From: Macrostomum lignano
Lineage: Eukaryota
Reading direction: 5' to 3'
Assembly: GCA_002269645.1 (NCBI GenBank)
Contig: NIVC01001682.1
Location: 1 to 26,770, forward strand
DNA: 26,770 bases
Shown here: one piece after another, positions 1 through 22,771 of the stretch
How the letters are laid out: each line of letters starts with the position of its first letter
How positions within the stretch are numbered: the first letter of the stretch is position 1
Notes under the pieces: generated by a model
What the model was told of the DNA's origin: nothing
The model's database searches: none
Seen by the model: only the letters and a program-made list of their open reading frames with translations
Position numbers and translations under genes: made by a program

Positions 1-368
<368 letters not shown>

Positions 369-704
369 GTATTTAGTACAGCAAAAAAACTCCTGTCTTA
401 AGTATCCATAAGCCTTTAAAAGGCATACTGCACCAATGTATACGAGTGTAATTGTAACTTCGATTTCTAAGAGCAAAAGAGACCTTCTGAGTGCTGAAAA
501 AAGCCACGAGTCATTTCATTAAATGGACTTCGAAGCCGCCATTCTTCTTTTGATGCTATTTTTGCAAGCTCACTTACCAAGCTGGGTGAGCCAGGCTTCC
601 GCAAGAGCACTACGCTCGTAGCAACTCAGGCCCTGAAATAAGAAGTTCGTCTTGCCTGCCCTCCCATCGAACTGACTTACTCGTAGCCCTGCCCTTCCCT
701 GGTA

Positions 705-3160: not shown

Positions 3161-3480
3161 AGGAGTGGGGTGGGCTACAGACACTGAGCGATAAGTTAAG
3201 TGAGCTAGCCAATGAGAGCTGCGGGAGTGGGGTGGGCTACAGACACGGCGATAAGTCAAGCGAGCTAGCCAATGAGAACTTTGGGAGTGGTGTGGGCCAC
3301 AGACACGGCGATAAGTCAAGCGAGCTAGCCAATGAGAACTTTGGGAGTGGGGTGGGCTACAGACACGGCGATAAGTCAAGCGAGCTAGCCAATGAGAACT
3401 TTGGGAGTGGGGTGGGCTACAGACACGGCGATAAGTCAAGCGAGCTAGCCAATGAGAACTGTAGGAGTGGTGTGGGCATC
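3161..3480. repeat. 60-bp tandem repeat, about 5.3 copies
   Basis: Unit AGACACGGCGATAAGTCAAGCGAGCTAGCCAATGAGAACTTTGGGAGTGGGGTGGGCTAC; consecutive 60-nt lines align almost exactly. Confidence 0.98.
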
Positions 3481-4529: not shown

Positions 4530-4699
4530 ATACAAAACATGCGCCACGGATACGAAAAAGTATTTTTATTGCCAGAAAACCAAAAGGAAACAAAAGTGAA
4601 GCTCGAAATTAGCGCAATCGCAGACAAACATGGCCCTCACGAATCTCATTCTTTATTCTAGCGCATCAAATCGAAACAGTCTTTATTTAGCAGCAATAA

Positions 4700-5125
4700 A
4701 CATAATCAATCTTGGACGCTCCTCCCGGGGACACTTTGCCATAGACATAATCAATCTTGCACGCTCCTCCCGGGGACACTTTGCCATAGACATAATCAAT
4801 CCTGGACGCTCCTCTCCTCCCGGGGCACTTTGCCATAGACATAATCAATCCTGGACGCTCCTCCCGGGGACACTTTGCCATAGACATAATCAATCTTGCA
4901 CGCTCCTCCCGGGGACACTTTGCCATAGACATAATCAATCTTGCACGCTCCTCCCGGGGACACTTTGCCATAGACATAATCAATCTTGCACGCTCCTCCC
5001 GGGGACACTTTGCCATAGACATAATCAATCTTGCACGCTCCTCCCGGGAACACTTTGCCATAGACATAATCAATCCTGGACGCTCCTCTCCTCCCGGGGC
5101 ACTTTGCCATAGACATAATCAATCC
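4700..5125. repeat. 45-bp minisatellite, about 9.4 copies (two 48-bp variants)
   Basis: Unit ACATAATCAATCTTGCACGCTCCTCCCGGGGACACTTTGCCATAG. It accounts for the repetitive ORFs 4630-5112, 4687-5073 and 4796-5209. Confidence 0.98.
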
Positions 5126-5196: not shown

Positions 5197-6339
5197 TCAG
5201 CCGCACCAACAGGCGGCCCGAAAGCGGCGAGCAAATTCACGTCGGAATTTCTTAGCCACCAGGCAGTAGAGAAAGAAATTAGCAGAATGATTGGCGTACA
5301 TCAGCAGCTCTGTACAGGCCAGGCCGAGCTGGTAGCGAGCATAGAACACAGTGTCGTTGTTCGTCTCGAAGTTGATCACGGACGACAGGGAGCTGAGCAC
5401 CTTTAGCACAGTGATGGGCAGCGAGGTGAAGATGAAGAAGAACGACACCAGCAAGAGCATCAGCGTCACCTGGTTGACGCTCCGGCCGAGACCAGACGAC
5501 TGGTAGCTGAACAGTGGGCGCCGATTAGCGTTGGTGATTGAGTTCAGCGAGCGCTGCGGCCTCTCGGACGCTGCCAGCACGCAGGTGGAGCCGCCAGCAG
5601 TCTGCGTGTCGGCTGCCGCCACCGGCCGGAGCCGCACCGACTCGCTGGCGGCGTTCAACTGGCCGGAGTAGAGCTTCTTGGAGATGTACAGCTTGCGGAT
5701 GATGAGGATATTGCACACCACCAGAATGGAGATGGGAATCAGGGAGTAGAGGGAAAAATCCAGCCAGGCGAGCGGCTGCTTCAACGAGGCGAATCTCGGG
5801 CGCAGGTCGCAGATTCGATGGGTCCGGTTCGACCCCGGCCGCCAGTGAAAGTCGTAGACGTCCAGCACGAAGAACCAGTGGGCGTTGAGCAGCAGGCAGA
5901 CAATCAGGAGGGCGCCGATGATGCGACGGGTGCGCTCAACCGCCGTGTTGGGCGTCGGCAGCTGGGACAGCAGGACGAACACCCGTTCGAGAGTTACGGC
6001 CGCGATGAGAAACACGCTGAAGTAGGTGGCCATGGTGGACAGGAAGTTGCCGCCGATGCACAGCTCCACGCTGATGAGGGAGCAATCGTAGCCAAGCAGG
6101 CAGGAGATCCAGGACTTGAACAGGCCAGACAACAGGGTCACCTGGTCCGCTATGCTCAGCACTAACAGGTAATTGTGCGTGCCATTTCTTTTCACGTGGT
6201 TCTTCAGTATCCAGACAGACAGGCAGTTGGCAACGGACCCGACCAGGAGGAGCAGCGGACTGCCGGCCCAGCAGAGCCACTTGGCTGCCCGGAATTCCCA
6301 GTGCCGAGTGTAGAGCAGCAGGTCCTGATCGGATTGCAT
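5197..6339 (-). CDS. Class A (rhodopsin-like) GPCR, FMRFamide/neuropeptide-receptor-like orphan, 380 aa, uninterrupted CDS
   Basis: Seven hydrophobic segments: TM1 VGSVANCLSV, TM2 LSIAD, TM3 Cys and TLERV, TM4 LLNAHWFF, ECL2 Cys (HRIC), TM5 YSLIP...N, TM6 FFFIFTSLP, TM7 NHSANFFLY, helix 8 KKFRREF. First ATG at 6339; the ORF-track start at 6393 is a GTG upstream of a splice acceptor at 6386-6385. Confidence 0.93.
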   Translation of the reverse strand: MQSDQDLLLYTRHWEFRAAKWLCWAGSPLLLLVGSVANCLSVWILKNHVKRNGTHNYLLVLSIADQVTLLSGLFKSWISCLLGYDCSLISVELCIGGNFLSTMATYFSVFLIAAVTLERVFVLLSQLPTPNTAVERTRRIIGALLIVCLLLNAHWFFVLDVYDFHWRPGSNRTHRICDLRPRFASLKQPLAWLDFSLYSLIPISILVVCNILIIRKLYISKKLYSGQLNAASESVRLRPVAAADTQTAGGSTCVLAASERPQRSLNSITNANRRPLFSYQSSGLGRSVNQVTLMLLLVSFFFIFTSLPITVLKVLSSLSSVINFETNNDTVFYARYQLGLACTELLMYANHSANFFLYCLVAKKFRREFARRFRAACWCG

Positions 6340-7588
6340 GGCTGGGAGCGGAGGGCAGGTGGTGCGAACTCTAATACCAGCTACCTGAGACACAAGGTGT
6401 CATTTGGCAATTTCATAACGTAAAGATTTTCAGCCCCCCCCCCAGCTCTGTTTACGTGTAGAGCAAGACTTACATGTACGGAGTGAGAGGTATCAACCCA
6501 AGAAATCACTCTATTGAGAAATATCACCCAAGAGATTGCCTTCCCCTGGGAGATACCACTAAAGACATGCGTGATACGATGAGCTAGGAGATCGACATTA
6601 TGCTAAAATAAATTGTTTCTTTGATATTGCAAAGCCGCGATTAGCATACTAATTAAACTATTCAGCAGAAGACGCTGATGCAATTAAAACAACTTTACAA
6701 GAGAATATTGTACGAATCTATATATACGAGCGTACTCAGTAAGCATTAATAGAAACTTACTTGAGCCAAGCTTTTTTGACAACAAATGTCAAGCGGTAGA
6801 GTGAGGAGGATCCTTGGGATTCTTGGCTGCTTGACCGAGGAATAGTAAGCGATAAGAATTTGAGGGGAGGAGTGAGCAGTTTTATCTACTAACTCAACGA
6901 CTTGCAAAGCTTATCCTGATATTTGAGCAGCCAATGACAGTCAGTCAGTCAGTCAGCAGTTCATAGATGTCCTAAACTATAAATCTGGACAATAAGCAAA
7001 GCTCTGACAGTCATTTTTATTCAAACTTCACGGACTAAAACCGCGATAGTTAATCAGCATCCAGTTAAACAGCTTTGCAACACAGAAACTTACATTGAGG
7101 ATCCGTAGCACTTTATTGTCATGGAATTCTTATTTAAAATAATTAATATTATTATATATATATTGCTTTTCTCAGCCAAGTTCAGCCAACAAGTTGTGAA
7201 TTCCCAGTTGGCAGCAGTACAGTAGATTTGGTAGTAGACTTCCATGCAGTAAAGATCAGAATTACCTGCTTGATTTCCCTCTCCGTCTGTGTCTATGGAC
7301 AAGACCAAATCTACTGTTGCCAAATGGCTCGATCAACTTGATTTGCTCAAAACCTCTTCAAGACGGTGGAAATATTCGCCACTCTCCGTTTCAGTTGGAT
7401 GAGTCAAATTCGGGCTATAGACACAAATTTCTGCTCAACCCCTGTATCCCCATTCCAGTCGGAAGGATCATAGAGGGAAAGATTTTGTACGAGCTACATA
7501 CACGTATGCCTGTGTCCTCTGAGTTTCTGTCACAGACAGTAAAGTGCTTTATTTTAATCCGCAACTTACCAAAAGTTTTTCAAAAGTC

Positions 7589-11554: not shown

Positions 11555-11949
11555 GTAAGGCTCGGGCATTGTTTAGCCTGTTTCAATCCATTTCTAGGTT
11601 TTTGTTGAATCCAATTCAATTGGTTTCTGCACGAATTACAGTGCTTTTTTGCACAAAATGCATTTGATGCTTCTTAAAGTGAATAAATGAGCCGAATTAT
11701 GAGTGCATGGGCAAACAAAGCACTCTAGTCAACCAGACCAACGCCTGCAAAATACACATGACCAGCTGCCTCAAGGGATGACGGAAAGCAGCCTACTTAG
11801 CTTTGTACTAACCACGGCCACCTCTGCTTAACTTGCAAGATAACTGGCAGCAAATACGTTGCGCTCTTGTTATCATCGCTCATGCTCCCCTTGCTGCATA
11901 CAACTCACTAACATCTATTTAACTATGCTTGCCAACAATATTTAAACAG

Positions 11950-12139
11950 ATACGGCATCGCCCTTCATATACTGCTGCCTCTAGTCACCCGGGTCATCGA
12001 CGTTGCACAGCTTTTTGATCTCACTCCGCTGCCGCAGTCTAAGCGCATATCATTTGGCGTAGAGGCGCAGAACAGCACGAACTACAATCGAGCCCTCACT
12101 GATGCCTTGCTGAATCCAGGAGCGCAGCTTCATACTTGA
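11950..12139 (+). CDS. Putative terminal exon joined to 11313-11554
   Basis: Branch-like CACTAAC near 11906 and acceptor tttaaacag at 11949. Phase 2 matches the upstream donor. Reads (R)YGIALHILLPLVTRVIDVAQLFDL...GAQLHT*, 62 codons to TGA at 12137-12139. Missed by the ORF track because it has no start codon. Confidence 0.55.
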
Positions 12140-12210: not shown

Positions 12211-13184
12211 GATTGATCTATCCACCTCACAGATCCTCAGATTGATCTATCCACCTCACAGATCCTGATTGATCTATCCACCTCACAGGTCCTCAGATTG
12301 ATCTATCCACCTCACAGGTCCTCAGATTGATTTATCCACCTCACAGATCCTCAGATTGATCTATCCACCTCACAGATCCTCAGATTGATCTATCCACCTC
12401 ACAGGTCCTCAGATTGATCTATCCACCTCACAGATCCTCAGATTGATCTATCCACCTCACAGGTCCTCAGATTGATCTATCCACCTCACAGATCCTGATT
12501 GATCTATCCACCTCACAGGTCCTCAGATTGATCTATCCACCTCACAGGTCCTCAGATTGATCTATCCACCTCACAGATCCTCAGATTGATCTATCCACCT
12601 CACAGATCCTCAGATTGATCTATCCACCTCACAGATCCTCAGATTGATCTATCCACCTCACAGATCCTCAGATTGATCTATCCACCTCAAAGATCCTCCT
12701 CAGATTGATCTGTATCTATCCACCTTAAAGATCCTCCTCAGATTGATCTATTGAACACTTCAAAGATCCTCAGATTGATCTATCCACCTTAAAGATTCTC
12801 CTCAGATTGATCTATATCTATCCACCTCAAAGATCCTCCTTAGATTGATCTATCCACCTTAAAGATTCTCCTCAGATTGATCTATATCTATCCACCTCAC
12901 AGATCCTCAGATTGATCTATCCACCTCAAAGATCCTCCTCAGATTGATCTGTATCTATCCACCTTAAAGATCCTCCTCAGATTGATCTATTGAACACTTC
13001 AAAGATCCTCAGATTGATCTATCCACCTTAAAGATTCTCCTCAGATTGATCGGTATCTATCCACCTTATAGATTCTCCTCAGATTGATCTATATCTATCC
13101 ACCTCAAAGATCCTCCTTAGATTGATCTATCCACCTTAAAGATCCTCCTCAGTTTGATCTATTGACCACTTCAAGGATCCTCAG
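12211..13184. repeat. 29-bp satellite with 26/32/38-bp variants and a 239-bp higher-order duplication
   Basis: Unit GATTGATCTATCCACCTCACAGATCCTCA; the block from 12662 is repeated from 12901. Confidence 0.97.
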
Positions 13185-13668: not shown

Positions 13669-13876
13669 CTAGGCTCGCTTGGCCTCGCCGAACTCCAGCA
13701 CGCCGAGGCCGCGGACGGCAGCGCGGCTTCGACGATTTGGCCAGCTGACGCAGCCGATGAAAGCGAAGGAGCCCCGGCCGCGGCTGCACCAGGCGTCGGC
13801 TGTGGCGGACGCCAGCTTGCGGATGGCGGCGCTGAGCAGGTCCGTCTGGTTGCCAACGTCAACGATAACTAGAGAC
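13669..13876 (-). CDS. MSH4: MSH4-like exon 6 (Walker B region to stop)
   Basis: cccgctgcag|G TCT CTA GTT ATC GTT GAC in phase 2 gives (R)SLVIVDVGNQTD...SFAFIGC...EAKRA*. The ORF track shows a different frame here. Confidence 0.8.
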
Positions 13877-16800
13877 CTGCAGCGGGGAGGGGTCGTGCAA
13901 GGGGTCTTGATTATTTGTTATTACTTTTATTTAGGGAATTAGGGAATATATAGATATAGGTCTAATCTAATACTTTTAGGGATTCTGGAATGCAAGCCAA
14001 ATACGAGTACCATAGGAATTTCGGTGGCAATTCGAGATATTCTGAGAGAGGGTCGGTATTTTGGGGGCTGGATAGATAAGCAGATGAAATTTATGTGTGA
14101 ACTGTCAAGTCTCTAAGTCTTCAGATGCAAAGAGCTTACCAGATCCCACTGAAGGGTTAAAATGCTGACAAACTAACCGGAGAATCGAGGGAGATTAGCG
14201 ATTGAAAGACAGATTTGAGAAGACTCAACAAAACTGCAAAAAATGAGTTTTAATTGGCCTGTTTCAAAAACTCACCTGCTAGTGAGCCCGTTGCACAGAC
14301 CGCTCAGCTGATCGAATAGAGCGCCAGATCCTTCCGTGTTCCAATCCGCGCTTTCCGCGGCGCCCCCAGCGGAGTCTGGCACCTCGTCGATCGGCGCCAG
14401 ACGCAGTGCGATAAGCCGATCGCACAGGCGGAACGAGGCCTGCAAAGCGGGCACGTCCGAGCCGGCCTGGGCCATGACCTGCATCAGGCCGATCTGCCGA
14501 AGGAAGTCGCGCCTGTCCTGGCCGGCGCCGCCGCACACGGCCAGCAGGGAGCAGGCCCGCGAGGCGAACGCGTGCCGCCCGGGCCCGCCGCCGCAGACCG
14601 ATCGGCGCCGTGTCGGACAGGCGAGCGGCGGCGGCAGCGGGTGGCGGCCGCAGCGAATGGCGAGCCGGTCGCCGAACTCCGGCCTGGTGTAGCCGCGCTG
14701 CACGCTGGCCAGAGCTAGGGAGCTGAGCAGATCGGCATTGCTAACGGCATCAATGCATTTGAATAGCTGCATGGCGTGGGCTGGCAGCGACTCAAATAGC
14801 AGCTCAAATATCTGCAGCGTCAGCTTGTAGACGTTCTCGACGCTGACCTCGATGTCGGCGTTCAGAGCCGCCAGCTGGCTAGTGGTGAAGCTGCAGCACC
14901 GGCGGCCAATTGTCAGGTTGAGAAGCTCAGGCGCCAGACGGCTAGCTGTCTCCAGCAGGGTTGGCGGCCTCCGCTGCTCCCGGCGCCGCTGCTGAGGTGC
15001 TTGGCAATCTAGCTCGCTGCTGCACCAGCTGCTGCTGCTGCCGTAGGTGTTGCCGTTGCCGGCTGAGCTTGCAGACGACTTGGAAATAGCAGCGGCAGCA
15101 GCACCAGAGATATTGTCGTGAGGACTCACTAGTAGGGAGCTGAGTGTCTCATCGTCATTAGCGTCGCCGTCCTATTGAGAAGCAGAAAAAGTAGTTAAAG
15201 CTGTTACAGCTGATTTCAAGGCACCCAAGCGGGCTGCTTGCCAACAAAGAAGACGATTTCAGCCAAGCCTGTATTTGAGCGCTAAGGAAACCACCTGGAA
15301 GAGAGGCCTATAAACTTTGCGTTTATTGTTCAACTGCATTAGGCAGAAACCAGCTTGGTGAAAGCTCAGACCCGAGCCCGTTAATCTATAATCGAAGCGG
15401 CAGGCAAAAATTGATTAAAAGCTTTCCATTTCTTTTCAAGAAAATTATTTATCGCTTTTTTATAATTTGATGGCCTGGATTCGTCTTTGAAAACAAAAGA
15501 ACAACCTCGGCAGCAAAGAGGGCTAAGCGGATTATCTATGGAAGAAAAAACGTATCAATTTATTCAGTCAAGGCAAACAGGCCATTAAAGTGATTGGAAT
15601 CGAATTAACCAGAAGCTGCGAATTATATTAGAATCCTACTCTAACAGATTAGCTTCCGTATCATGATCACATGAAATGGAGAATTAATTAGCATAGGCTT
15701 ATCCAAGATCTGCTCAGACAAATAAGATATAGTATAAGATGCTCTTGTTTAAAGACTTTTTTTACCCTCTACATGACACTTACAGTTCAAGGCTGTTATG
15801 CGTCTGGGGCTTGCGGCTTGTCGTCTGATCCGCAGAAATGAGGGCAACAGCTAAAGCACAGAGTGTATTCATAACTGACAATGAGACAGCTAGGGCTGCT
15901 GTAAACCCTGTGTGAGTGAGCAGCTAGGGCTGCTGTAAACCCTGTGTGAGTGAGCAGCTAGGGCTGCTGTACATCCTTGAGAGTGAGCAGCCACTCTCAC
16001 TCATACATGCGCAACCTCCAAAATTCGGTCGGCCGTGCGACTTAGTTTTAACAAAAATGCGACGTAGTTTTTGGCCAAAAATGCGACTTGCATGTAAAAA
16101 AACCGTAAAGCAAAATTAACGCAAGTTTGGGTAAACGGCAGGAGTAACTATGACTCTCTTATTAAGCCAAAATGCTTCGTCAGCTACTTAGTACTACTAC
16201 TAGGGTGTTTTTTGAGTGGGCATTTTTGCGACTTCCTTGGTTGGTCGCCAAATCGGTCGGCCGGATCGGCCGACTCGGCCGACTGTTGCGCATGTATGCT
16301 CTCACTGAATCTGAGCAGCCACTCTCACTGAATCTGAGCAGCCACTCTCACTGAATCTGAGCAGCCACTCTCACTGAATCTGAGCAGCCACTCTCACTGA
16401 ATCTGAGCAGCCACTCTCACTGAATCTGAGCAGCCACTCTCACTGAATCTGAGCAGCCACTCTCACTGAATCTAAACAGCCACCCTCACTGAATCTAAGC
16501 AGTGAGCAGTCACTCTCACTAAATCTGAGCAGCCACTCTCACTAAATCTGAGCAGTCACTCTCACTGAATCTGAGCAGCCACTCTCACTGAATCTGAGCA
16601 GCCACTCTCACTGAATCTAAACAGCCACTCTCACTAAATCTGAGCAGTCACTCTCACTTAATCTAAGCAGCCACTCTCACTGAATCTGAGCAGCCACTCT
16701 CACTAAATCTAAACAGCCACCCTCACTGAATCTAAGCAGTCACTCTCACTAAATCTGAGCAGCCACTCTCACTGAATCTGAGCAGTCACTCTCACTAAAT

Positions 16801-19800
16801 CTGAGCAGCCACTCTCACTGAATCTGAGCAGTCACTCACTGAATTTAAACAGCCACCCTCACTGAATCTGAGCAGCCACTCTCACTGAATCTGAGCAGCC
16901 ACTCTCACTGAATCTGAGCAGTCACTCTCACTAAATCTGAGCAGTCACTCTCACTGAATCTGAGCAGCCACTCTCACTGAATCTGAGAAGCCACTCTCAC
17001 TGAATCTAAACAGCCACTCTCACTAAATCTGAGCAGTCACTCTCACTGAATCTGAGCAGCCACTCTCACCGAATCTGAGCAGTCACTCTCACTAAATCTG
17101 AGCAGCCACTCTCACTGAATCTGAGCAGTCACTCACTGAATTTAAACAGCCACCCTCACTGAATCTGAGCAGCCACTCTCACTGAATCTGAGCAGCCACT
17201 CTCACTGAATCTGAGCAGTCACTCTCACTAAATCTGAGCAGTCACTCTCACTGAATCTGAGCAGCCACTCTCACTGAATCTGAGAAGCCACTCTCACTGA
17301 ATCTAAACAGCCACTCTCACTAAATCTGAGCAGTCACTCTCACTGAATCTGAGCAGCCACTCTCACTGAATCTGAGCAGCCACTCTCACTGAATCTAAAC
17401 AGCCACTCTCACTAAATCTGAGCAGCCACTCTCACTGAATCTGAGCAGCCACTCTCACTGAATCTGAGCAGCCACTCTCACTGAATCTGAGCAGTCACTC
17501 TCACTAAATCTGAGCAGCCACTCTCACTGAATCTGAGCAGCCACTCTCACTGAATCTGAGCAGCCACTCTCACTGAATCTAAACAGCCACCCTCACTGAA
17601 TCTAAGCAGTGAGCAGTCACTCTCACTAAATCTGAGCAGCCACTCTCACTAAATCTGAGCAGTCACTCTCACTGAATCTGAGCAGCCACTCTCACTGAAT
17701 CTGAGCAGCCACTCTCACTGAATCTAAACAGCCACTCTCACTAAATCTGAGCAGTCACTCTCACTTAATCTAAGCAGCCACTCTCACTGAATCTGAGCAG
17801 CCACTCTCACTAAATCTGAGCAGTCACTCTCACTGAATCTGAGCAGCCACTCTCACTGAATCTAAACAGCCACTCTCACTAAATCTGAGCAGTCACTCTC
17901 ACTGAATCTGAGCAGCCACTCTCACCGAATCTGAGCAGTCACTCTCACTAAATCTGAGCAGCCACTCTCACTGAATCTGAGCAGTCACTCACTGAATTTA
18001 AACAGCCACCCTCACTGAATCTGAGCAGCCACTCTCACTGAATCTGAGCAGCCACTCTCACTGAATCTGAGCAGTCACTCTCACTAAATCTGAGCAGTCA
18101 CTCTCACTGAATCTGAGCAGCCACTCTCACTGAATCTGAGAAGCCACTCTCACTGAATCTAAACAGCCACTCTCACTAAATCTGAGCAGTCACTCTCACT
18201 GAATCTGAGCAGCCACTCTCACTGAATCTGAGCAGCCACTCTCACTGAATCTAAACAGCCACTCTCACTAAATCTGAGCAGCCACTCTCACTGAATCTGA
18301 GCAGCCACTCTCACTGAATCTGAGCAGCCACTCTCACTGAATCTGAGCAGTCACTCTCACTAAATCTGAGCAGCCACTCTCACTGAATCTGAGCAGCCAC
18401 TCTCACTGAATCTGAGCAGCCACTCTCACTGAATCTAAACAGCCACCCTCACTGAATCTAAGCAGTGAGCAGTCACTCTCACTAAATCTGAGCAGCCACT
18501 CTCACTAAATCTGAGCAGTCACTCTCACTGAATCTGAGCAGCCACTCTCACTGAATCTGAGCAGCCACTCTCACTGAATCTAAACAGCCACTCTCACTAA
18601 ATCTGAGCAGTCACTCTCACTTAATCTAAGCAGCCACTCTCACTGAATCTGAGCAGCCACTCTCACTGAATCTGAGCAGCCACTCTCACTGAATCTAAGC
18701 AGTGAGCAGTCACTCTCACTAAATCTGAGCAGCCACTCTCACTGAATCTGAGCAGCCACTCTCACTGAATATGAGCAGCCACTCTCACTGAATCTGAGCA
18801 GCCACTCTCACTGAATCTGAGCAGCCACTCTCACTGAATCTGAGCAGCCACTCTCACTGAATCTGAGCAGCCACTCTCACTGAATCTGAGCTACTTGACT
18901 AAATCGGGCTAATCTCATTAAATATATAACAAGGCTGTGATAATACTCAACTATTTGCTTTCGTCGCTCGGTGAGAAATTGGCCCAGCGCTTGCCGGCTG
19001 CACTGCGCATGGAAGCCGCGTAGTTTTGAGTGCGCAAGCGCAGCCTCGAGGCCCAGCCGGCCAGCCAGGTCGGCAACCAGCCGCTCCGCCGCCGCCACCT
19101 GGCTGGCGTACAGCTGGCGAGCTCGATCTAGGGAGTCGTTGACGCCGGGCCTGACAGCGCCGATGCGTTGCGCGTGCATAGTTAAGCGGCCGCGCGAATA
19201 GCGCATGTCCGGGTTGGCCAGCACTTCGAAGTGAGCGCGCAGCCGCGGCAGAGCTGGCTCGTCCAGGGCCCGGCGGAAATTGGCGAACAATGGATGCCGA
19301 AGGGGGGCGAGGGCCTGGCTGAGCGGGTCCAGGCGGCCCAGCATGTGGTGCAGGTAGATGATGCGGTTAATTCGGGTGCGAGCCACGTTGATTGTCGGCG
19401 GCATGCGAGACCGGCGTCGGCACAGCGAGTTGATGCAGTTGAAGTACGAGAACTCCGCCAACTGGGCGCGCAATGACTGAGATAAATATGAGCAAAAAGA
19501 AATTAGATTGACTTTTGCTATCTGCACTACTGTCAGTAGGGGAGATAAAAGCGCTGTGACAAACAGAAAATGTCACGTCTTTGAAAGTTTTTTTAAATAG
19601 GAAATTTCACAGAAAGCTATTAAAAAGTTAAAACTAGTTTATAAAAAATGAGAAAATGACAGTGAACAGGTGGAAAAGGGAAGGAGAAGTCCAACTGCCA
19701 GTCTACAAAGAGAAGGAAGGGAGCCCGACGTTAACTGCCGAAAATAGGGTTAAGGTCTAGGGTTTAGGTTAGGGTCAGAGTCGGCAGTCGTGGAGCTATA

Positions 19801-22771
19801 GGGGATAGGGAAAGGGAAGACTGGGGTTAGTAGGCGAGCTAGATTTCGCCTTGACATTCACCTGTAGTACAGCCGGATTCGTTCGCAGCTCCTCTACGCA
19901 GTCCTGCCTAGTGCGAATCGAATCCAAATCGGTTAGCGGCTGCAGCAGCGACATTCGGAGCAGCCGGGCCCCGCCACCAGTCAGAGTGTAGTTGAGCACG
20001 GCGAACAGATGGCCTCCGCTGCGGCCATCCAGCGATTCCACCAGTTCGAGCTGTCTGAAGTGTCGGAATTTAGCAGGGCAGCACATCGAGCTGTTGCTAA
20101 CAGGCAGAAAAATATGATAATAAAAGTGGCAAAGCGGCGAAAATAACACGGAAAAATTAATTAAAGTGTTTGATTGAAAGTGCCATCAATCACACTTGCT
20201 GCATAGCTGCGCATATTTCGCTAATCTGTGAGAAAATGTGAGAAAGAGGAAAATCTCAAAACTCTAGTTCTCGCTTAACTCTGGCGCTAGGCCGCAAAAC
20301 GTTGCCATTGCAAAGCACTCTCTTTCTCTCCACCGAGCCCGCGACTCCACCAGCGGGGCCCACCACCCCGAAAAAGCGGCAGATGCCGCACGCGTCGTTG
20401 AGGTCGAGGGGTTGCCTCCGCTCGGTGCGCTACATCTGCTGCCGCTACTGCGGCTGAATGATTTCAGATAGCTTGCCAGATCAGACGGAGTTCGCTCCTG
20501 TGCTATGTGCTGCAGACTGTCTCTATTTATGAGCTGTTTTGCACAACTTTATAATGAATTAAATATAACCAGCTGATGGGATAAGAAACTACCAACAGAA
20601 AGAAAAATATACACATGATTTGCAGCAAATAACGGGTGCCTAATGATTTGCCTAATGATAATTGGAACGCCACATTTGGCTTCTTACTTCTCCACTACAA
20701 GTCAGCGATCTCTTCCCTTCCCCTTATTGCAACCTAGCTAATTTGCAATTGGCAAGCGAGACATATTTTAAACGTATATTGCTTATTGTTTCATATGGAT
20801 ATTTTCTAATATACATTATTTATATATACAAGCAAGCAATGTCTTTAATCTTTTAATATTATAAATGTAAGGCATAATACTCATAAATTGTCATGTTTAT
20901 TTAAATATTTATTAAACTTCATTAATATAATTTATTTAGGCTCTTCTAGCTGTTGGACAAGCAACATGTCGCAGATCGTCGATACCAAACACCAAAAAGG
21001 CACGAGATGGGTACCAGGTACCAGGGCCTACCTTCGGCAATTTCTAAATACGATATTAATTGAGATCTCCGGCTAGCATTGCCCACGAAGTAAAGACAAA
21101 GTGTTTATGGAGAGCGTGGCTGACCAACGGATTTGAAAGGACTAATGCACCATGTGAATAACTTAAACACAAATTTTCTGTACAGCATAGATGCTGGACC
21201 TGCCAACAAAGCATTTCTATAAGGCGTCTAACAACAAGTAAGCAGGATACGTGTATCACTTCTGCTTATCAAAAATGATTTCATTGGTTTACAAAAGAGC
21301 CCAAATTAGACACGCACCGAGCCGTGCCGTAGTCCATAATGAGCGACGCAGAATGGGCATTGTAAGCCAGTCGAACGCTGGCATCGCCGAACACGGTGTC
21401 CAATTGAAGTTCGGCGAATGCCTGCAGCACAGCGCAAGAATAGAATATGAAATTGCACACTGGCAGCTGCTGCAGCACTGGCTGACTGTCCGGGTGGCAG
21501 ACTCGGCGAACGAATGCTCGTCCATCGGCTTCGTTAAACAGTATTCTCGGGGCCGACACGATTCGGCAGGCGGGGAATTTCACAGCCAGCAGGCGGAATA
21601 GTTCGTAAATTTCCGAGTTGCACAGCGTGTCAGGCAGTAGTACAATCGCCGGATCAAACCAACAAACCAAACTGAGGGTTTTCTGATAGGCCAGGCAGTC
21701 AGTCAGTTTTACAATGTCCAACCGATCCGAGTCTAGGTCCAGTACAGCGATAGCCAGGTCACGTGACTTGGTGCCGCGGCCTTCGCTAATTGCCATGCAG
21801 CGCGCGGGATCAGTTAGAGGCATTGTCCGCCTCTGTTGGCTCTGACGAGACTGCGACGAGCTTTGCCGACCTAGGAAATCAAGTGGCACTTGCAATTAGC
21901 TGATTAGGTTTGTGGCTGAAGAGGGCCACTTTTGATGAGCTCTGGAGGGTAATTACGCAATTTTTGAAGGGAGGGTTTATAGAGGGAATCGCAATGGACA
22001 AGGCCTCACGATGAGGTTATGGAGGGCTACTTCCCATCTGGCTTATAGAGGGAATCTAAATGGGGCTTACAGAAGTAATTTTAATGGGTTTTATAGAGGA
22101 GCTCTCAATGGGGTTCAAAAGACTCTCAATGGGATCATATATGACAATCAATGGGATTCGTAGGACTCTAGCACTTCATAGGACTGGGTTTCATAGAACT
22201 CTCAGTGCGGATTAAAGCAAGACTTTTAACGCTGATCATAGAAGGACACTCAATGAGGCTTACGGAGGGACTATCAGGTGGGGTTAAAAGAGGGGTTCTA
22301 AATGAGGTTAGTAATATGACACTATAAACTGCAGTTTTAGTGACCCCAGATCTGATTAAAACTTGCGGTTGTACTTCTATTTATTAATAAAAAATTTAAT
22401 AACAAAATTCCATCTATTTAGCAACGTTAAAGCTGTTAGTTCTGTGTCAAGGTATGGCTGGCAGCCATGCTAAAAAATCAATTACCAGTAGCAGCCGAAG
22501 GTGGCATGAATTTGAAGATGCTGCCATCAGCTGCGGCAGGTGGCGGCCCTGGCGCAGCAGCAAAGCTTGGATGGGCGTGTCTATCCAGGGGACGTTGGTG
22601 GACGCTGCTTCTACTCGAGCCCACTGTTCCACTAGAAACAGTTGCAGCCGAGCGCAGCGGAGTCAAGATGCTGCTGTACTGGCTGGACTGCTGGTGACTG
22701 CCACTATGTCCACTGGAGCCTGTGTAAGCTGACTCTGCTGATGAAGCCAGAAAATGGTGGCCCCGCTTCAT
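13669..22771 (-). CDS. MSH4: MutS homolog 4 (MSH4)-like, six exons, 892 aa; ATPase motifs degenerate
   Basis: join(complement) 22771-22486, 21888-21318, 20054-19862, 19476-18952, 15171-14276, 13876-13669 totals 2679 nt. All introns are GT-AG with matching phases 1,2,0,0,2. MSH4-type blocks: AISEGRG, FNEADG, LELV...LFAVLNYTLTGGGARLLR, RGF, YTRPEF..LAIRCGRHP, FLRQIGLMQVMAQAGSDVPA, SLVIVD. Confidence 0.88.
14276..15171 (-). CDS. MSH4: MSH4-like exon 5 (insertion, lever, ATPase N-half)
   Basis: ttctcaatag|GAC phase 0; CCSFTTSQL...DAVSNADLLSSLA...GYTRPEFGDRLAIRCGRHP...FLRQIGLMQVMAQAGSDVPA; donor AG|GTGAGT. Confidence 0.92.
15887..15990. repeat. 34-bp minisatellite, 3 copies (MSH4-like intron 4)
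   Basis: CAGCTAGGGCTGCTGTAAACCCTGTGTGAGTGAG starting at 15887, 15921 and 15955. Confidence 0.93.
16002..16298. mobile_element. 297-bp MITE, perfect 14-bp TIR, 8-bp TSD (hAT- or P-type)
   Basis: TIR CATACATGCGCAAC / GTTGCGCATGTATG; TSD CTCTCACT at 15994-16001 and 16299-16306; subterminal GTCGGCC repeats. The superfamily is inferred only from TSD length and CA...TG ends. Confidence 0.9.
16299..18891. repeat. 23-bp satellite, about 112 copies, with 297-bp and 856-bp higher-order repeats
   Basis: Unit CTCTCACTGAATCTGAGCAGCCA. The diagnostic GAGAAG variant occurs at 16985, 17282 and 18138 (spacings 297 and 856). Confidence 0.99.
18952..19476 (-). CDS. MSH4: MSH4-like exon 4 (lever/clamp)
   Basis: tatctcag|TCA; INRIIYLHHML...HAQRIGAVRPGVNDSLDRARQLY...KLRGFHAQ parallels MSH4 ITNLIYLKHTL...[23 protein letters not shown]...ARGFFIQ. 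The 3' boundary (ATA|GTTGAG) is the least certain. Confidence 0.85.
19862..20054 (-). CDS. MSH4: MSH4-like exon 3 (lever domain start)
   Basis: cacttcag|A CAG CTC GAA gives QLELVESLDGRSGGHLFAVLNYTLTGGGARLLRMSLLQPLTDLDSIRTRQDCVEEL; donor CAG|GTGAAT. Confidence 0.93.
21318..21888 (-). CDS. MSH4: MSH4-like exon 2 (connector domain)
   Basis: MAISEGRGTKSRDLAIAVLDL...FNEADGRAFV...IMDYGTAR matches the MSH4 AVVEGRG...FNETKG...IDSSSAQNLEL region. Acceptor ttgcaag (weak); donor CG|GTGCGT. Confidence 0.88.
21970..22310. repeat. Highly degenerate minisatellite of about 24 bp (MSH4-like intron 1)
   Basis: Recurrent TTATAGAGGGA...CAATGGG-like modules with variable spacing. Confidence 0.55.
22486..22771 (-). 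CDS. MSH4: MSH4-like exon 1 (Ser/Ala-rich low-complexity N-terminus)
   Basis: ATG at 22771 with an in-frame TAG just upstream; donor G|GTAATT in phase 1 fits the exon 2 acceptor. There is no homology evidence, only phase and composition. Confidence 0.6.

What the first reader, a model, noticed from the sequence alone, without database searches (positions are those of the whole stretch)
13669..15171. MSH4-like protein with all ATPase motifs destroyed but an intact frame: candidate pseudo-ATPase MutS-gamma subunit
Seen: aligned by eye to canonical MSH4, Walker A GPNMSGKST reads GGAGQDRRD with the same spacing (GKS to DRR). The signature STFxxEM reads SGALFDQL, Walker B IDELGRGT reads IVDVGNQT (catalytic Glu to Val), and the H-loop FATH reads FIGC. 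Flanking scaffold residues (FLRQIGL, MAQAGSDVPA, SLVIVD) and the connector/lever/clamp are kept, with no stops or frameshifts across six phase-consistent exons. Known: MutS dimers form composite ABC sites in which the signature motif acts on the partner's nucleotide, and MSH4-MSH5 uses ATP binding to form sliding clamps on recombination intermediates. Inference: focal loss of all four motifs in an open 892-codon frame looks like a selected non-catalytic scaffold rather than random decay. It might also weaken the partner's site, implying an ATP-independent meiotic role or a repurposed paralog.
Basis: partly seen in the sequence, partly recalled or inferred. Interest (0 to 1): 0.85.

Follow-up and report, generated by a model that had tools for sequence, protein, structure and literature searches.

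The report
Flatworm MSH4 with erased ATPase
This is the meiotic crossover gene MSH4 of the flatworm Macrostomum lignano: its frame is open and its DNA-clamp half is conserved, but every ATP-binding and ATP-hydrolysis motif is gone, and parasitic flatworms carry a milder, conserved version of the same loss.

Summary
The window is contig NIVC01001682.1 of Macrostomum lignano. It is identical to the RNA-seq-derived annotation BOX15_Mlig008393g1.

Its closest relatives in an exhaustive HMMER search are named MSH4. Aligned to them:
- Walker A TGPNMSGKST reads CGGAGQDRRD.
- The signature is replaced by a disordered insert.
- Walker B DELGRGT reads D-VGNQT.
- The H-loop ATHF reads FIGC.
- About 130-180 C-terminal residues, including the dimerisation helix-turn-helix, are missing.

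Three genomic copies share these states, so assembly error is excluded. Two copies are intact and one has two 1-bp deletions.

Between copies, the connector/lever/clamp (aa 95-509) has 0 nonsynonymous and 10 synonymous changes. The ATPase remnant has 7 and 2 (omega about 0.9). The gene is therefore alive, but selection acts on domains II-IV, not on the ATPase remnant.

All 13 trematode and 3 cestode MSH4 sequences examined lack the Walker B glutamate and H-loop histidine but keep the P-loop lysine. Molluscs, annelids and a nemertean are canonical.

The MSH5 partner, gonad expression and a possible canonical paralogue could not be checked.

The parts
22486..22771 (-). Exon 0: start codon (ATG at 22771-22769) and the Ser/Gln-rich N-terminal tail (aa 1-96). 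Predicted disordered.
   Evidence: tblastn and translation. pLDDT below 50 for residues 1-83. omega 0.97 between copies.
21318..21870 (-). Exon 1: MutS domain II (connector), beginning at the MSH4-type AISEGRG motif (21773-21793). There is no domain I.
   Evidence: weak MutS_II hit, no MutS_I. Alignment A1. GTGCGT donor at 21317.
19862..20054 (-). Exon 2: start of MutS domain III (lever), with LFAVLNYTLTGGGARLLR.
   Evidence: Pfam MutS_III E = 4.8e-18 for this exon. Splice sites.
18952..19476 (-). Exon 3: the rest of the outgoing lever and the first half of domain IV (clamp).
   Evidence: Alignments A1 and A2. pLDDT 80-94. No nonsynonymous change among the three copies.
16299..18891 (.). 23-bp minisatellite (about 112 copies) inside the 3.8-kb intron 3. 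Array length differs between the three gene copies.
   Evidence: TRF. (array about 1 kb in L001, about 3.2 kb in L003).
14276..15171 (-). Exon 4, in order:
- low-complexity insert (aa 520-596, window 14941-15171)
- end of the clamp and the return lever helix
- GRHP (14638-14649)
- Walker A remnant CGGAGQDRRD (14506-14535)
- conserved FLRQIGLMQVMAQAGSDVPA (14446-14505)
- disordered insert replacing the signature motif (14305-14397)
   Evidence: MutS_V scores only 24-25 bits, below the 30.2 cutoff.
13669..13876 (-). Exon 5:
- Walker B remnant SLVIVD-VGNQT (13843-13875)
- H-loop remnant FAFIGC (13750-13767)
- 26 further residues
- TAG stop (13671-13669)

The C-terminal helix-turn-helix part of domain V is absent.
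   Evidence: No relic of the missing C-terminus anywhere downstream in the window.

Best explanation
This is the Macrostomum lignano orthologue of MSH4, the MutS-gamma subunit that promotes class I meiotic crossovers. It is a live, transcribed gene.

Shown:
- Its product keeps a constrained connector-lever-clamp module (MutS domains II-IV).
- The ABC ATPase domain has been reduced to a catalytically impossible remnant. There is no P-loop lysine, no adenine-loop Asn, no signature Ser, no Walker B Glu and no H-loop His. The C-terminal dimerisation helix-turn-helix is also gone.

Inferred: the protein works as a non-catalytic junction-embracing or scaffolding subunit. Whatever it does (pairing with MSH5, binding recombination intermediates, recruiting MutL-gamma/EXO1-type partners) is carried by domains II-IV. 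It does not use an ATP-driven clamp cycle on the MSH4 side. Its missing signature motif would also leave MSH5's composite site incomplete.

Shown: it is the extreme end of a flatworm-wide trend. In all trematodes and cestodes examined, MSH4 keeps ATP-binding residues and the signature. It has nonetheless stably lost the catalytic Glu, the GRGT Arg and the H-loop His.
For: Identity and gene model
- The window is NIVC01001682.1. My model is identical to PAA65101.1.
- The GenBank annotation is built from StringTie/TACO RNA-seq assemblies (PMC5730564).

MSH4 assignment
- An exhaustive HMMER search gives best hits at E = 1e-79 to 1e-50. All that carry a family name are named MSH4 or MutS protein 4: lamprey, locust, ant, barnacle, Trichinella, moths, fungi.
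- There is no domain I.
- The domain IV insert sits at the same position as in neodermatan MSH4.

Motif loss
- Shown in alignments A1 and A2.
- A census of about 150 relatives shows intact motifs in nearly all full-length MSH4s.

Not an artefact
- Three genomic copies have the same motif-coding DNA.

Selection
- Whole-gene omega is 0.37.
- aa 95-509 has 0 nonsynonymous and 10 synonymous changes among the three copies. Against neutrality p = 1.4e-6.
- The ATPase region has 7 nonsynonymous and 2 synonymous. Fisher p = 7e-4 for the contrast.
- The two intact copies differ by no 1-bp indel in 2.66 kb of CDS. Introns carry about 1.1 per kb.

Focal loss
- Nucleotide-site columns are retained 0/12. 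Other conserved domain V columns are retained 18/22.

Structure
- The AF2 model has pLDDT 74-94 in domains II-IV and 56-88 in the remnant's beta-alpha core.
- Foldseek matches MutS, MSH2 and MSH3 at E about 1e-28.

Phylum context
- 13 trematode sequences all read GRNI / GK[ST] / SSFxxE / IDGLCQxT / ATQ or ATN.
- 3 cestodes read IDD[LF]GLxT and TSS or ATA.
- Other lophotrochozoans are canonical.
- Within Neodermata, domain V is as conserved as domains II-IV or more so.

Precedent
- In yeast, msh4-R676W (predicted hydrolysis defect) keeps wild-type spore viability. The matched msh5-R685W is null.
- Human MSH4 is reported to bind ATP weakly (PMC2928781).
Against: - The ATPase remnant evolves at omega about 0.9, and the third copy (L003) carries two frameshifts in exon 4. 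Part of the gene is therefore decaying. The selection signal rests on only 31-40 substitutions among near-identical copies of one species.
- In yeast the Walker A mutant msh4-G639A is null, so loss of ATP binding is not tolerated everywhere.
- Loss of the helix-turn-helix and the signature makes heterodimerisation with MSH5 uncertain.
- No tissue-level expression table could be found.
- MSH5 and a possible second MSH4 in M. lignano were not examined.
- An NJ tree places the protein inside MSH4 relative to bacterial MutS, but on the longest branch. Support for grouping with other flatworms is only 31%.
Confidence: 0.6

Rival explanations
1. The gene is on its way to loss. M. lignano no longer uses MutS-gamma, as in Drosophila or some fungi. 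This MSH4 is an early-stage, still-transcribed pseudogene, and its N-terminal conservation is residual.
For: - ATPase remnant omega is about 0.9, and the N-terminal tail and insert are about 0.8-1.0.
- The C-terminal part of domain V is deleted with no relic.
- One of three copies has two frameshifts.
- MutS_V scores below the Pfam threshold.
- It is the longest branch among MSH4s.
- Independent MSH4/MSH5 pseudogenisations are documented in fungi (bioRxiv 10.1101/750497, listed).
- Authors suspect error-prone meiosis in this species (PMC5068713).
Against: - 0 nonsynonymous versus 10 synonymous changes in 415 codons of domains II-IV is incompatible with neutrality (p = 1.4e-6).
- Two copies keep an 886-889 codon frame with no 1-bp indels, while introns carry about 1.1 per kb.
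- Motif loss is focal, with the flanking MAQxGxxVPA, GRHP and SLVxxD kept. Uniform decay would not leave that pattern.
- Related flatworms have kept a hydrolysis-dead MSH4 across whole classes.
Confidence: 0.2
2. It is a repurposed or subfunctionalised MSH4 paralogue. A canonical MSH4 exists elsewhere in the M. lignano genome and does the MutS-gamma job. This copy has taken a different, ATP-independent role.
For: - M. lignano is a recent hidden polyploid with extensive duplication (PMC5704211; PMC5730564).
- I could not query the genome directly.
- Only 30 of the 150 best exhaustive hits could be named.
Against: - No Macrostomum protein other than the three near-identical copies appeared in the word-index searches.
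- None appeared among the named top hits. The two GC-rich unnamed candidates I looked up come from unrelated Logan or metagenome contigs.
- None of the other top-150 hits has a flatworm as its nearest relative, apart from the five neodermatan MSH4s.
- The neodermatan orthologues are also degenerate and appear as one gene per species in the hit list. Degeneracy therefore does not need a canonical back-up copy.
Confidence: 0.13
3. Assembly or annotation artefact: sequencing errors or a mis-joined model create the degenerate motifs or the early stop.
For: - The assembly is PacBio/Canu with Pilon polishing in a highly duplicated genome.
- The third copy's two 1-bp deletions could be errors of this kind.
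Against: - Three independently assembled contigs have identical DNA across the Walker A, signature, Walker B and H-loop regions and the stop codon.
- The changes are substitutions over dozens of codons, not indels.
- The other two reading frames hide no canonical motifs.
- The exon structure comes from RNA-seq.
Confidence: 0.02

Closest known systems
MSH4 (MutS homolog 4, the MutS-gamma subunit with MSH5) of other animals and fungi
   Same: - It is the best-scoring family in an exhaustive search.
- It has no domain I, and starts with the MSH4-type xxEGRG motif.
- Conserved MSH4 columns in domains II-IV are retained 32/38.
- GRHP and LRQxxxxQxMAQxGxxVPA are kept.
   Different: - Walker A, the adenine-loop Asn, the signature, Walker B Glu and Arg, and the H-loop are all lost.
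- The C-terminal 130-180 residues, including the helix-turn-helix, are missing.
- There is an insert of about 80-95 residues in domain IV and a 12-residue insert at the signature.
- Pfam MutS_V scores below threshold and MutS_IV is not detected.
Neodermatan (trematode and cestode) MSH4, e.g. Schistosoma mansoni A0A5K4F0U3, Paragonimus westermani, Taenia solium
   Same: - Same phylum.
- Walker B Glu, the GRGT Arg and the H-loop His are lost.
- The insert in domain IV is at the same alignment position.
   Different: - Neodermatan proteins keep the P-loop Lys (one has Arg), the signature SxFxxE and the full C-terminal domain.
- Their domain V is as conserved as domains II-IV or more so.
- They look like ATP-binding, hydrolysis-dead subunits. 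The Macrostomum protein cannot bind nucleotide at all.
- A shared origin of the two losses is not resolved (31% bootstrap).
Asymmetric ABC dimers with one degenerate nucleotide site (e.g. CFTR, TAP1/TAP2), and the known MSH2-MSH6 and Msh4-Msh5 ATPase asymmetry
   Same: One subunit of a composite two-site ABC dimer tolerates loss of catalysis. Yeast msh4-R676W is viable while msh5-R685W is null (PMC2928781).
   Different: In those systems the degenerate site still binds ATP and the signature motifs are kept. Here the site, the trans-acting signature and the dimerisation helix-turn-helix are all gone. This comparison rests on general knowledge of ABC proteins and was not tested here.
Loss or replacement of MutS-gamma (Drosophila mei-MCM; pseudogenised Msh4/Msh5 in Eurotiomycete fungi)
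   Same: A lineage in which canonical MutS-gamma ATPase function has been abandoned.
   Different: Here the gene is retained, open, transcribed and constrained over domains II-IV, rather than deleted or riddled with stops.

Membership tests
MSH4 (MutS-gamma subunit) | Closest sequence relatives are MSH4 orthologues, not MSH2/3/5/6 or bacterial MutS | tested here: met
   Exhaustive HMMER: 141 hits with E < 1e-30. Every looked-up hit that carries a family name is called MSH4 or MutS protein 4. PDB MutS, MSH2, MSH3 and MSH6 match only at 1e-16 to 1e-3. No MSH5 sequence was available for a direct tree.
MSH4 (MutS-gamma subunit) | Lacks the N-terminal mismatch-binding domain I; the architecture starts at domain II | tested here: met
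   No MutS_I hit. The alignment starts at the AISEGRG motif, after a disordered tail.
MSH4 (MutS-gamma subunit) | Domains II, III and IV (connector, lever, clamp) present | tested here: met
   MutS_III E = 1.7e-25, MutS_II weak, MutS_IV not detected by Pfam. However, 32/38 conserved MSH4 columns are retained, and the AF2 model with pLDDT 74-94 superposes on MutS.
MSH4 (MutS-gamma subunit) | Functional ABC ATPase domain V (Walker A GKS/T, signature STFxxE, Walker B DE, H-loop TH) | tested here: not met
   The four motifs read CGGAGQDRRD, a disordered insert, D-VGNQT and FIGC. Nucleotide-site columns are retained 0/12. MutS_V scores 24 bits against a 30.2 cutoff.
MSH4 (MutS-gamma subunit) | C-terminal helix-turn-helix part of domain V used for dimer contacts | tested here: not met
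   The protein ends 26 residues after the H-loop position, whereas orthologues continue for 130-300 residues. There is no relic downstream.
MSH4 (MutS-gamma subunit) | Heterodimer with MSH5; meiotic expression; pro-crossover function | not testable with these tools
   M. lignano MSH5 could not be retrieved. No expression table mentions Mlig008393 or Mlig032607.
Pseudoenzyme (pseudo-ATPase) | Catalytic residues lost while the gene stays open, expressed and under purifying selection | tested here: met
   The frame is open in 2 of 3 copies. Whole-gene omega is 0.37. Domains II-IV have 0 nonsynonymous and 10 synonymous changes. The gene model is RNA-seq-derived.
Pseudoenzyme (pseudo-ATPase) | The dead catalytic domain itself is conserved as a fold or binding module | tested here: inconclusive
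   For: focal loss, with 18/22 non-catalytic conserved columns kept and a moderate-confidence beta-alpha core. Against: omega about 0.9 with 7 nonsynonymous and 2 synonymous changes, the C-terminal truncation, and T829M in one copy.
Unprocessed pseudogene | Frame disruptions and neutral evolution over the whole gene | tested here: not met
   There are no stops or frameshifts in the window copy or in L001. Domains II-IV are strongly constrained. This is met only for the third copy, L003, which has two 1-bp deletions.

The most novel reading that the evidence does not exclude
Flatworm meiosis may run on a MutS-gamma whose MSH4 subunit needs no ATP chemistry. Hydrolysis was given up early and stably in the phylum, as seen across trematodes and cestodes. 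In Macrostomum the ATPase domain has become a dispensable vestige. The connector-lever-clamp module alone would then carry the pro-crossover or scaffolding function, possibly even without a classical ABC-type dimer with MSH5. If so, the ATP-driven sliding-clamp step, at least on the MSH4 side, is not a universal requirement for MutS-gamma function. It would also give a candidate link to the error-prone chromosome transmission of M. lignano.
Probability: 0.35. Interest if true: 0.8.

Novelty: new variant of a known kind. Interest (0 to 1): 0.62.

Why it matters
MutS-gamma is thought to stabilise crossover intermediates by ATP-dependent conversion into a sliding clamp. Which subunit's ATP binding and hydrolysis is actually needed is known only from point mutants in yeast and mouse.

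Flatworms appear to offer a graded natural experiment:
- Neodermata have a hydrolysis-dead but ATP-binding MSH4.
- Macrostomum has an MSH4 with no nucleotide site, no signature and no dimerisation helix-turn-helix, yet a strongly constrained clamp module.

M. lignano has RNAi and transgenesis and is transparent, so the question can be tested directly. The finding may also bear on the karyotype instability of this hidden polyploid. It also flags that MSH4 of medically important schistosomes and tapeworms departs from the canonical enzyme. I found no paper in the searchable library that describes this.

Tried and rejected
- **Profile search with a flatworm alignment (A3).** It returned only the Macrostomum cluster and bacterial MutS, so it gave no information on paralogues or planarians.
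- **Finding a canonical second MSH4 among unnamed top hits.** Nearest-neighbour BLAST and GC-rich composition gave two candidates. Both turned out to be intronless Logan or metagenome contigs unrelated to Macrostomum. P0033, also from Logan, is a canonical metazoan MSH4 closest to Nematostella and is not Macrostomum-like.
- **Expression evidence.** Supplement searches of four M. lignano papers for Mlig008393, Mlig032607 or MSH4 found nothing. An exact-protein look-up found no transcript contigs, only the genome contig.
- **NJ phylogeny.** The protein falls inside MSH4 relative to bacterial MutS, but flatworm monophyly has only 31% bootstrap. Long-branch effects are likely, so I treat this as inconclusive. 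An earlier attempt timed out.
- **Compensating frameshifts as the cause of the motif scrambling.** Rejected, because the other two frames of the motif regions contain no canonical motifs.
- **A missed downstream exon encoding the C-terminus.** Rejected for this window, because tblastn with 76 MSH4 C-termini found nothing below 13669. The RNA-based annotation ends at the same stop in all copies.
Full report
**What is in the window**

The window is GC-poor with GC-rich islands. Stop-to-stop scanning shows a chain of long open segments on the minus strand between 13.6 and 22.8 kb. Pfam assigns these segments to MutS domains II, III and, weakly, V.

Reading the boundaries on the minus strand gives six exons joined by five GT-AG introns in consistent phase:
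- E0 22771-22486, with the ATG at 22771
- E1 21870-21318
- E2 20054-19862
- E3 19476-18952
- E4 15171-14276
- E5 13876-13669, ending in TAG

The product is 886 residues. The finding's coordinates (13669-15171) are exactly E4 plus E5, the ATPase half.

**Origin**

[quoted passage not shown] The cluster holds PAA65101.1 (BOX15_Mlig008393g1), an 886-aa protein on a contig of 26,770 bp. That protein is letter-for-letter my model. The exact look-up places the gene at 13669-22771 of NIVC01001682.1. The window is therefore that whole contig.

The GenBank annotation of this assembly is derived from genome-guided RNA-seq assemblies (StringTie and TACO plus a de novo transcriptome), not from ab initio prediction (PMC5730564). 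The exon structure and the early stop are therefore transcript-supported. That is indirect evidence of expression. I found no tissue-level table that lists the gene.

**Which MutS homologue**

An exhaustive HMMER scan of 1.84 billion representatives gives 141 hits below 1e-30. The best are at 1e-79 to 1e-50 and match residues about 110-500 plus a second stretch in the C-terminal half.

I looked up 30 of these. Every one that carries a family name is MSH4 or 'MutS protein 4': lamprey, locust, ant, barnacle, shrimp, spider, Trichinella, moths, mosquito and several fungi. Solved MutS, MSH2, MSH3 and MSH6 chains match far more weakly.

The protein has no domain I and begins, after a disordered tail, with the MSH4-type AISEGRG motif. 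I therefore file it as the MSH4 orthologue by similarity ranking.

A quick NJ tree puts it inside MSH4 relative to bacterial MutS, but on the longest branch. Support for grouping with other flatworms is only 31%, so its position within MSH4 is unresolved. No MSH5 sequence was available for a direct test.

**The observation**

In alignments with lamprey, locust, ant, Nematostella, barnacle, Chromosphaera, a mucoromycete and a green alga (A1; A2) the following holds:
- Walker A TGPNMSGKST is CGGAGQDRRD, with no indel.
- The next twenty residues are almost unchanged: YLRQIALLQVMAQIGSYVPA against FLRQIGLMQVMAQAGSDVPA.
- The signature NxSTFxxEM region is replaced by a longer segment (APIDEVPDSAGGAAESADWNTEGSGALFDQL). 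AlphaFold2 leaves it disordered.
- Walker B SLVIIDELGRGT is SLVIVD-VGNQT. The Glu position is a gap.
- The H-loop FATHF is FIGC.

- The protein ends 26 residues after the H-loop position. Orthologues continue for 130-300 residues, including the helix-turn-helix that makes MutS dimer contacts.
- An insert of about 80-95 low-complexity residues sits in domain IV.

tblastn with 76 MSH4 C-termini finds no relic of the missing part downstream in the window. The alternative reading frames of the motif regions hide no canonical motifs.

**Is it more than chance or decay?**

I took the 79 alignment columns that are at least 80% conserved among 77 canonical MSH4 proteins.
- In domains II-IV plus the lever, the Macrostomum protein keeps 32 of 38.
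- In domain V it keeps 20 of 41.
- Within the part of domain V that is present, the nucleotide-site columns are kept 0 of 12. These are the adenine-loop Asn, GPN-M-GK, signature S and F, Walker B E-L-R, and T-H.
- Other conserved domain V columns are kept 18 of 22 (Fisher p = 3e-6).

A census over the 150 best relatives shows intact motifs in essentially every full-length MSH4. The exceptions are a small set discussed under 'The phylum context'.

**Three copies and what selection sees**

The Mlig_3_7 assembly holds three collinear copies that are 96-98% identical, including in their introns:
- the window
- L001 (NIVC01002432, Mlig032607g1)
- L003 (NIVC01000995, Mlig008393g2)

These appear. Three copies fit the known recent whole-genome duplication and the extra large chromosomes of the DV1 line (PMC5704211; PMC5730564).

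All three have identical DNA over the four motif remnants and the stop. This excludes sequencing error and dates the degeneration before the copies diverged.

The window and L001 are intact. L003 has two 1-bp deletions in exon 4 and is annotated as a 606-aa truncated product. These are either real or polishing errors.

Introns differ by 2.2% and carry about 1.1 single-base indels per kb. The two intact coding sequences differ by 1.2% and by no single-base indel.

Nei-Gojobori estimates between the two intact copies give dS 0.022, dN 0.008 and omega 0.37. The average hides a sharp contrast:

| Region | Window vs L001 | Across all three copies |
|---|---|---|
| aa 95-509 (connector, lever, clamp) | 0 nonsynonymous / 8 synonymous | 0 / 10 |
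| aa 690-886 (ATPase remnant) | 5 / 2, omega 0.92 | 7 / 2, including T829M at a conserved column |
| N-terminal tail | omega 0.97 | not computed |
| Domain IV insert | omega 0.78 | not computed |

The core departs from neutrality at p = 1.4e-6. It differs from the ATPase region at p = 7e-4.

The numbers are small and come from one species. Still, they say that the gene is alive and that what is being preserved now is domains II-IV. The ATPase remnant is at best weakly constrained.

The focal pattern against distant orthologues suggests the remnant's core was maintained for some time after the catalytic residues went. I cannot decide between 'weakly constrained fold' and 'recently released vestige'.

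**Structure**

AlphaFold2 with a shallow alignment gives mean pLDDT 66 and pTM 0.65.
- pLDDT is 74-94 through domains II-IV.
- pLDDT is 56-88 in a beta-alpha-beta core of the remnant. This covers strands 718-732, helix 736-755, strands 763-776, the Walker B strand 819-824 and strand 855-860.
- pLDDT is below 50 in residues 1-116, 534-585, 700-716, 779-801 and 861-886.

Foldseek against the PDB returns E. coli and Taq MutS and human MSH2 and MSH3 at about 1e-28. This is consistent with a MutS-shaped protein. It is not an independent test of foldability.

**The phylum context**

The few relatives with damaged motifs in the census turned out to be parasitic flatworms. A search seeded with the Paragonimus protein recovered many more.

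| Group | GRHP motif | P-loop | Signature | Walker B | H-loop |
|---|---|---|---|---|---|
| 13 trematode sequences (Paragonimus, Opisthorchis, Clonorchis, Calicophoron, six Schistosoma species, Heterobilharzia) | GRNI | Lys kept, GK[ST]; one GRT | SSFxxE kept | IDGLCQ(S/N)T | ATQ or ATN |
| 3 cestodes (Taenia, Anoplocephala, Schistocephalus) | GRHM or GRHP | Lys kept, GK[ST] | STFxxE kept | IDD(L/F)GLxT | TSS or ATA |
| Molluscs, annelids, a nemertean | canonical (GRHP; single-residue variants in two) | canonical | canonical | IDELGRGT | (A/V)THF |

The neodermatan proteins keep the full C-terminus. Their domain V is as conserved between families as domains II-IV or more so (58-76% against 57-63%).

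A hydrolysis-dead but probably ATP-binding MSH4 is therefore a stable, selected state across Neodermata.

They also carry an insert in domain IV at the same alignment position as the Macrostomum insert.

I cannot tell whether the Macrostomum and neodermatan losses share one origin. The replacement residues differ (Glu becomes Gly in trematodes, Asp in cestodes, and a gap in Macrostomum), and no planarian, polyclad or catenulid sequence was recovered.

**How it most likely works**

Shown: nucleotide binding and hydrolysis by this subunit are impossible on any known ABC mechanism, and the constrained part is the connector-lever-clamp.

From established knowledge of MutS and ABC dimers: each nucleotide site is completed in trans by the partner's signature motif. 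The missing signature would therefore also leave MSH5's site incomplete. The missing helix-turn-helix removes a major dimer contact.

Inferred: the protein serves as a non-catalytic subunit or scaffold. Its clamp and lever embrace or mark recombination intermediates and recruit partners. Any ATP-dependent step is left to MSH5 or abandoned.

Genetic precedent for asymmetry exists. In yeast, the predicted hydrolysis mutant msh4-R676W has wild-type spore viability while msh5-R685W is null. Human MSH4 is reported to bind ATP poorly. On the other hand the Walker A mutant msh4-G639A is null (PMC2928781). The Macrostomum state therefore goes beyond what yeast tolerates.

Authors working on M. lignano karyotypes suspect error-prone meiosis and note that its meiosis has not been described (PMC5068713). 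A link to this gene is speculation.

**Rivals**

- Ongoing gene loss fits the neutral-looking ATPase half, the truncation and the frameshifted third copy. It does not fit the 0/10 pattern in domains II-IV or the absence of indels in two copies.
- A repurposed paralogue with a canonical MSH4 elsewhere cannot be excluded, because I could not search the genome. Nothing of that kind surfaced.
- An artefact is excluded by three concordant copies.

**Verdict**

This is a new variant of a known kind: an MSH4 orthologue reduced to a constrained clamp module plus a dead, truncated ATPase remnant. It sits at the extreme of a flatworm-wide, previously undescribed (as far as the searchable literature shows) erosion of MSH4 catalysis.

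Noticed in passing
L003 17938-18837 (exon 4 of the third copy, NIVC01000995.1): The third genomic copy of the gene has two separate 1-bp deletions in exon 4. It is annotated as a 606-aa product (Mlig008393g2) that ends before the ATPase remnant. This is either a real pseudogenised or truncated copy, or a polishing error in a duplicated region.
   Followed up: partly
window 13669-22771 versus L001 and L003: Variant sites show a mosaic pattern. L003 matches the window in exons 0, 2 and 3 but matches L001 at blocks of sites in exons 1, 4 and 5. This suggests recombination or gene conversion among the copies or alleles.
   Followed up: partly
window 16299-18891: A 23-bp minisatellite (CTCTCACTGAATCTGAGCAGCCA, about 112 copies, strong GC skew) fills most of intron 3. 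The array is about 1 kb in L001 and about 3.2 kb in L003.
   Followed up: partly
window 12211-13184: A 29-bp minisatellite (about 27 copies, with higher-order periods of 87-239 bp) lies just downstream of the gene's 3' end.
   Followed up: no
window 5200-6399 (-): An intronless 400-codon open frame encodes a rhodopsin-family GPCR (Pfam 7tm_1, E = 6e-16). It is GC-rich like the MSH4 exons.
   Followed up: partly
window 4-371; 706-1158; 3162-3477; 4696-5124: Further tandem arrays: (TAG)n of about 123 copies at the contig end, 19/25/50-bp repeats, a 60-bp x5 array and a 45-bp x9 array. These fit the repeat-rich genome and probably explain why the contig ends here.
   Followed up: no
window about 11669-12139 (+): The public annotation places a 131-residue gene with no Pfam hit just downstream of MSH4 on the opposite strand (seen in L006 and L003). 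I did not examine it.
   Followed up: no
P0229-P0247 (trematode and cestode MSH4 proteins): In trematodes the otherwise near-invariant GRHP motif ahead of the P-loop is GRNI in all 13 sequences. The GPN of Walker A is GPS or GPP in most. The degenerate Walker B sequence IDGLCQxT is itself conserved across families.
   Followed up: partly
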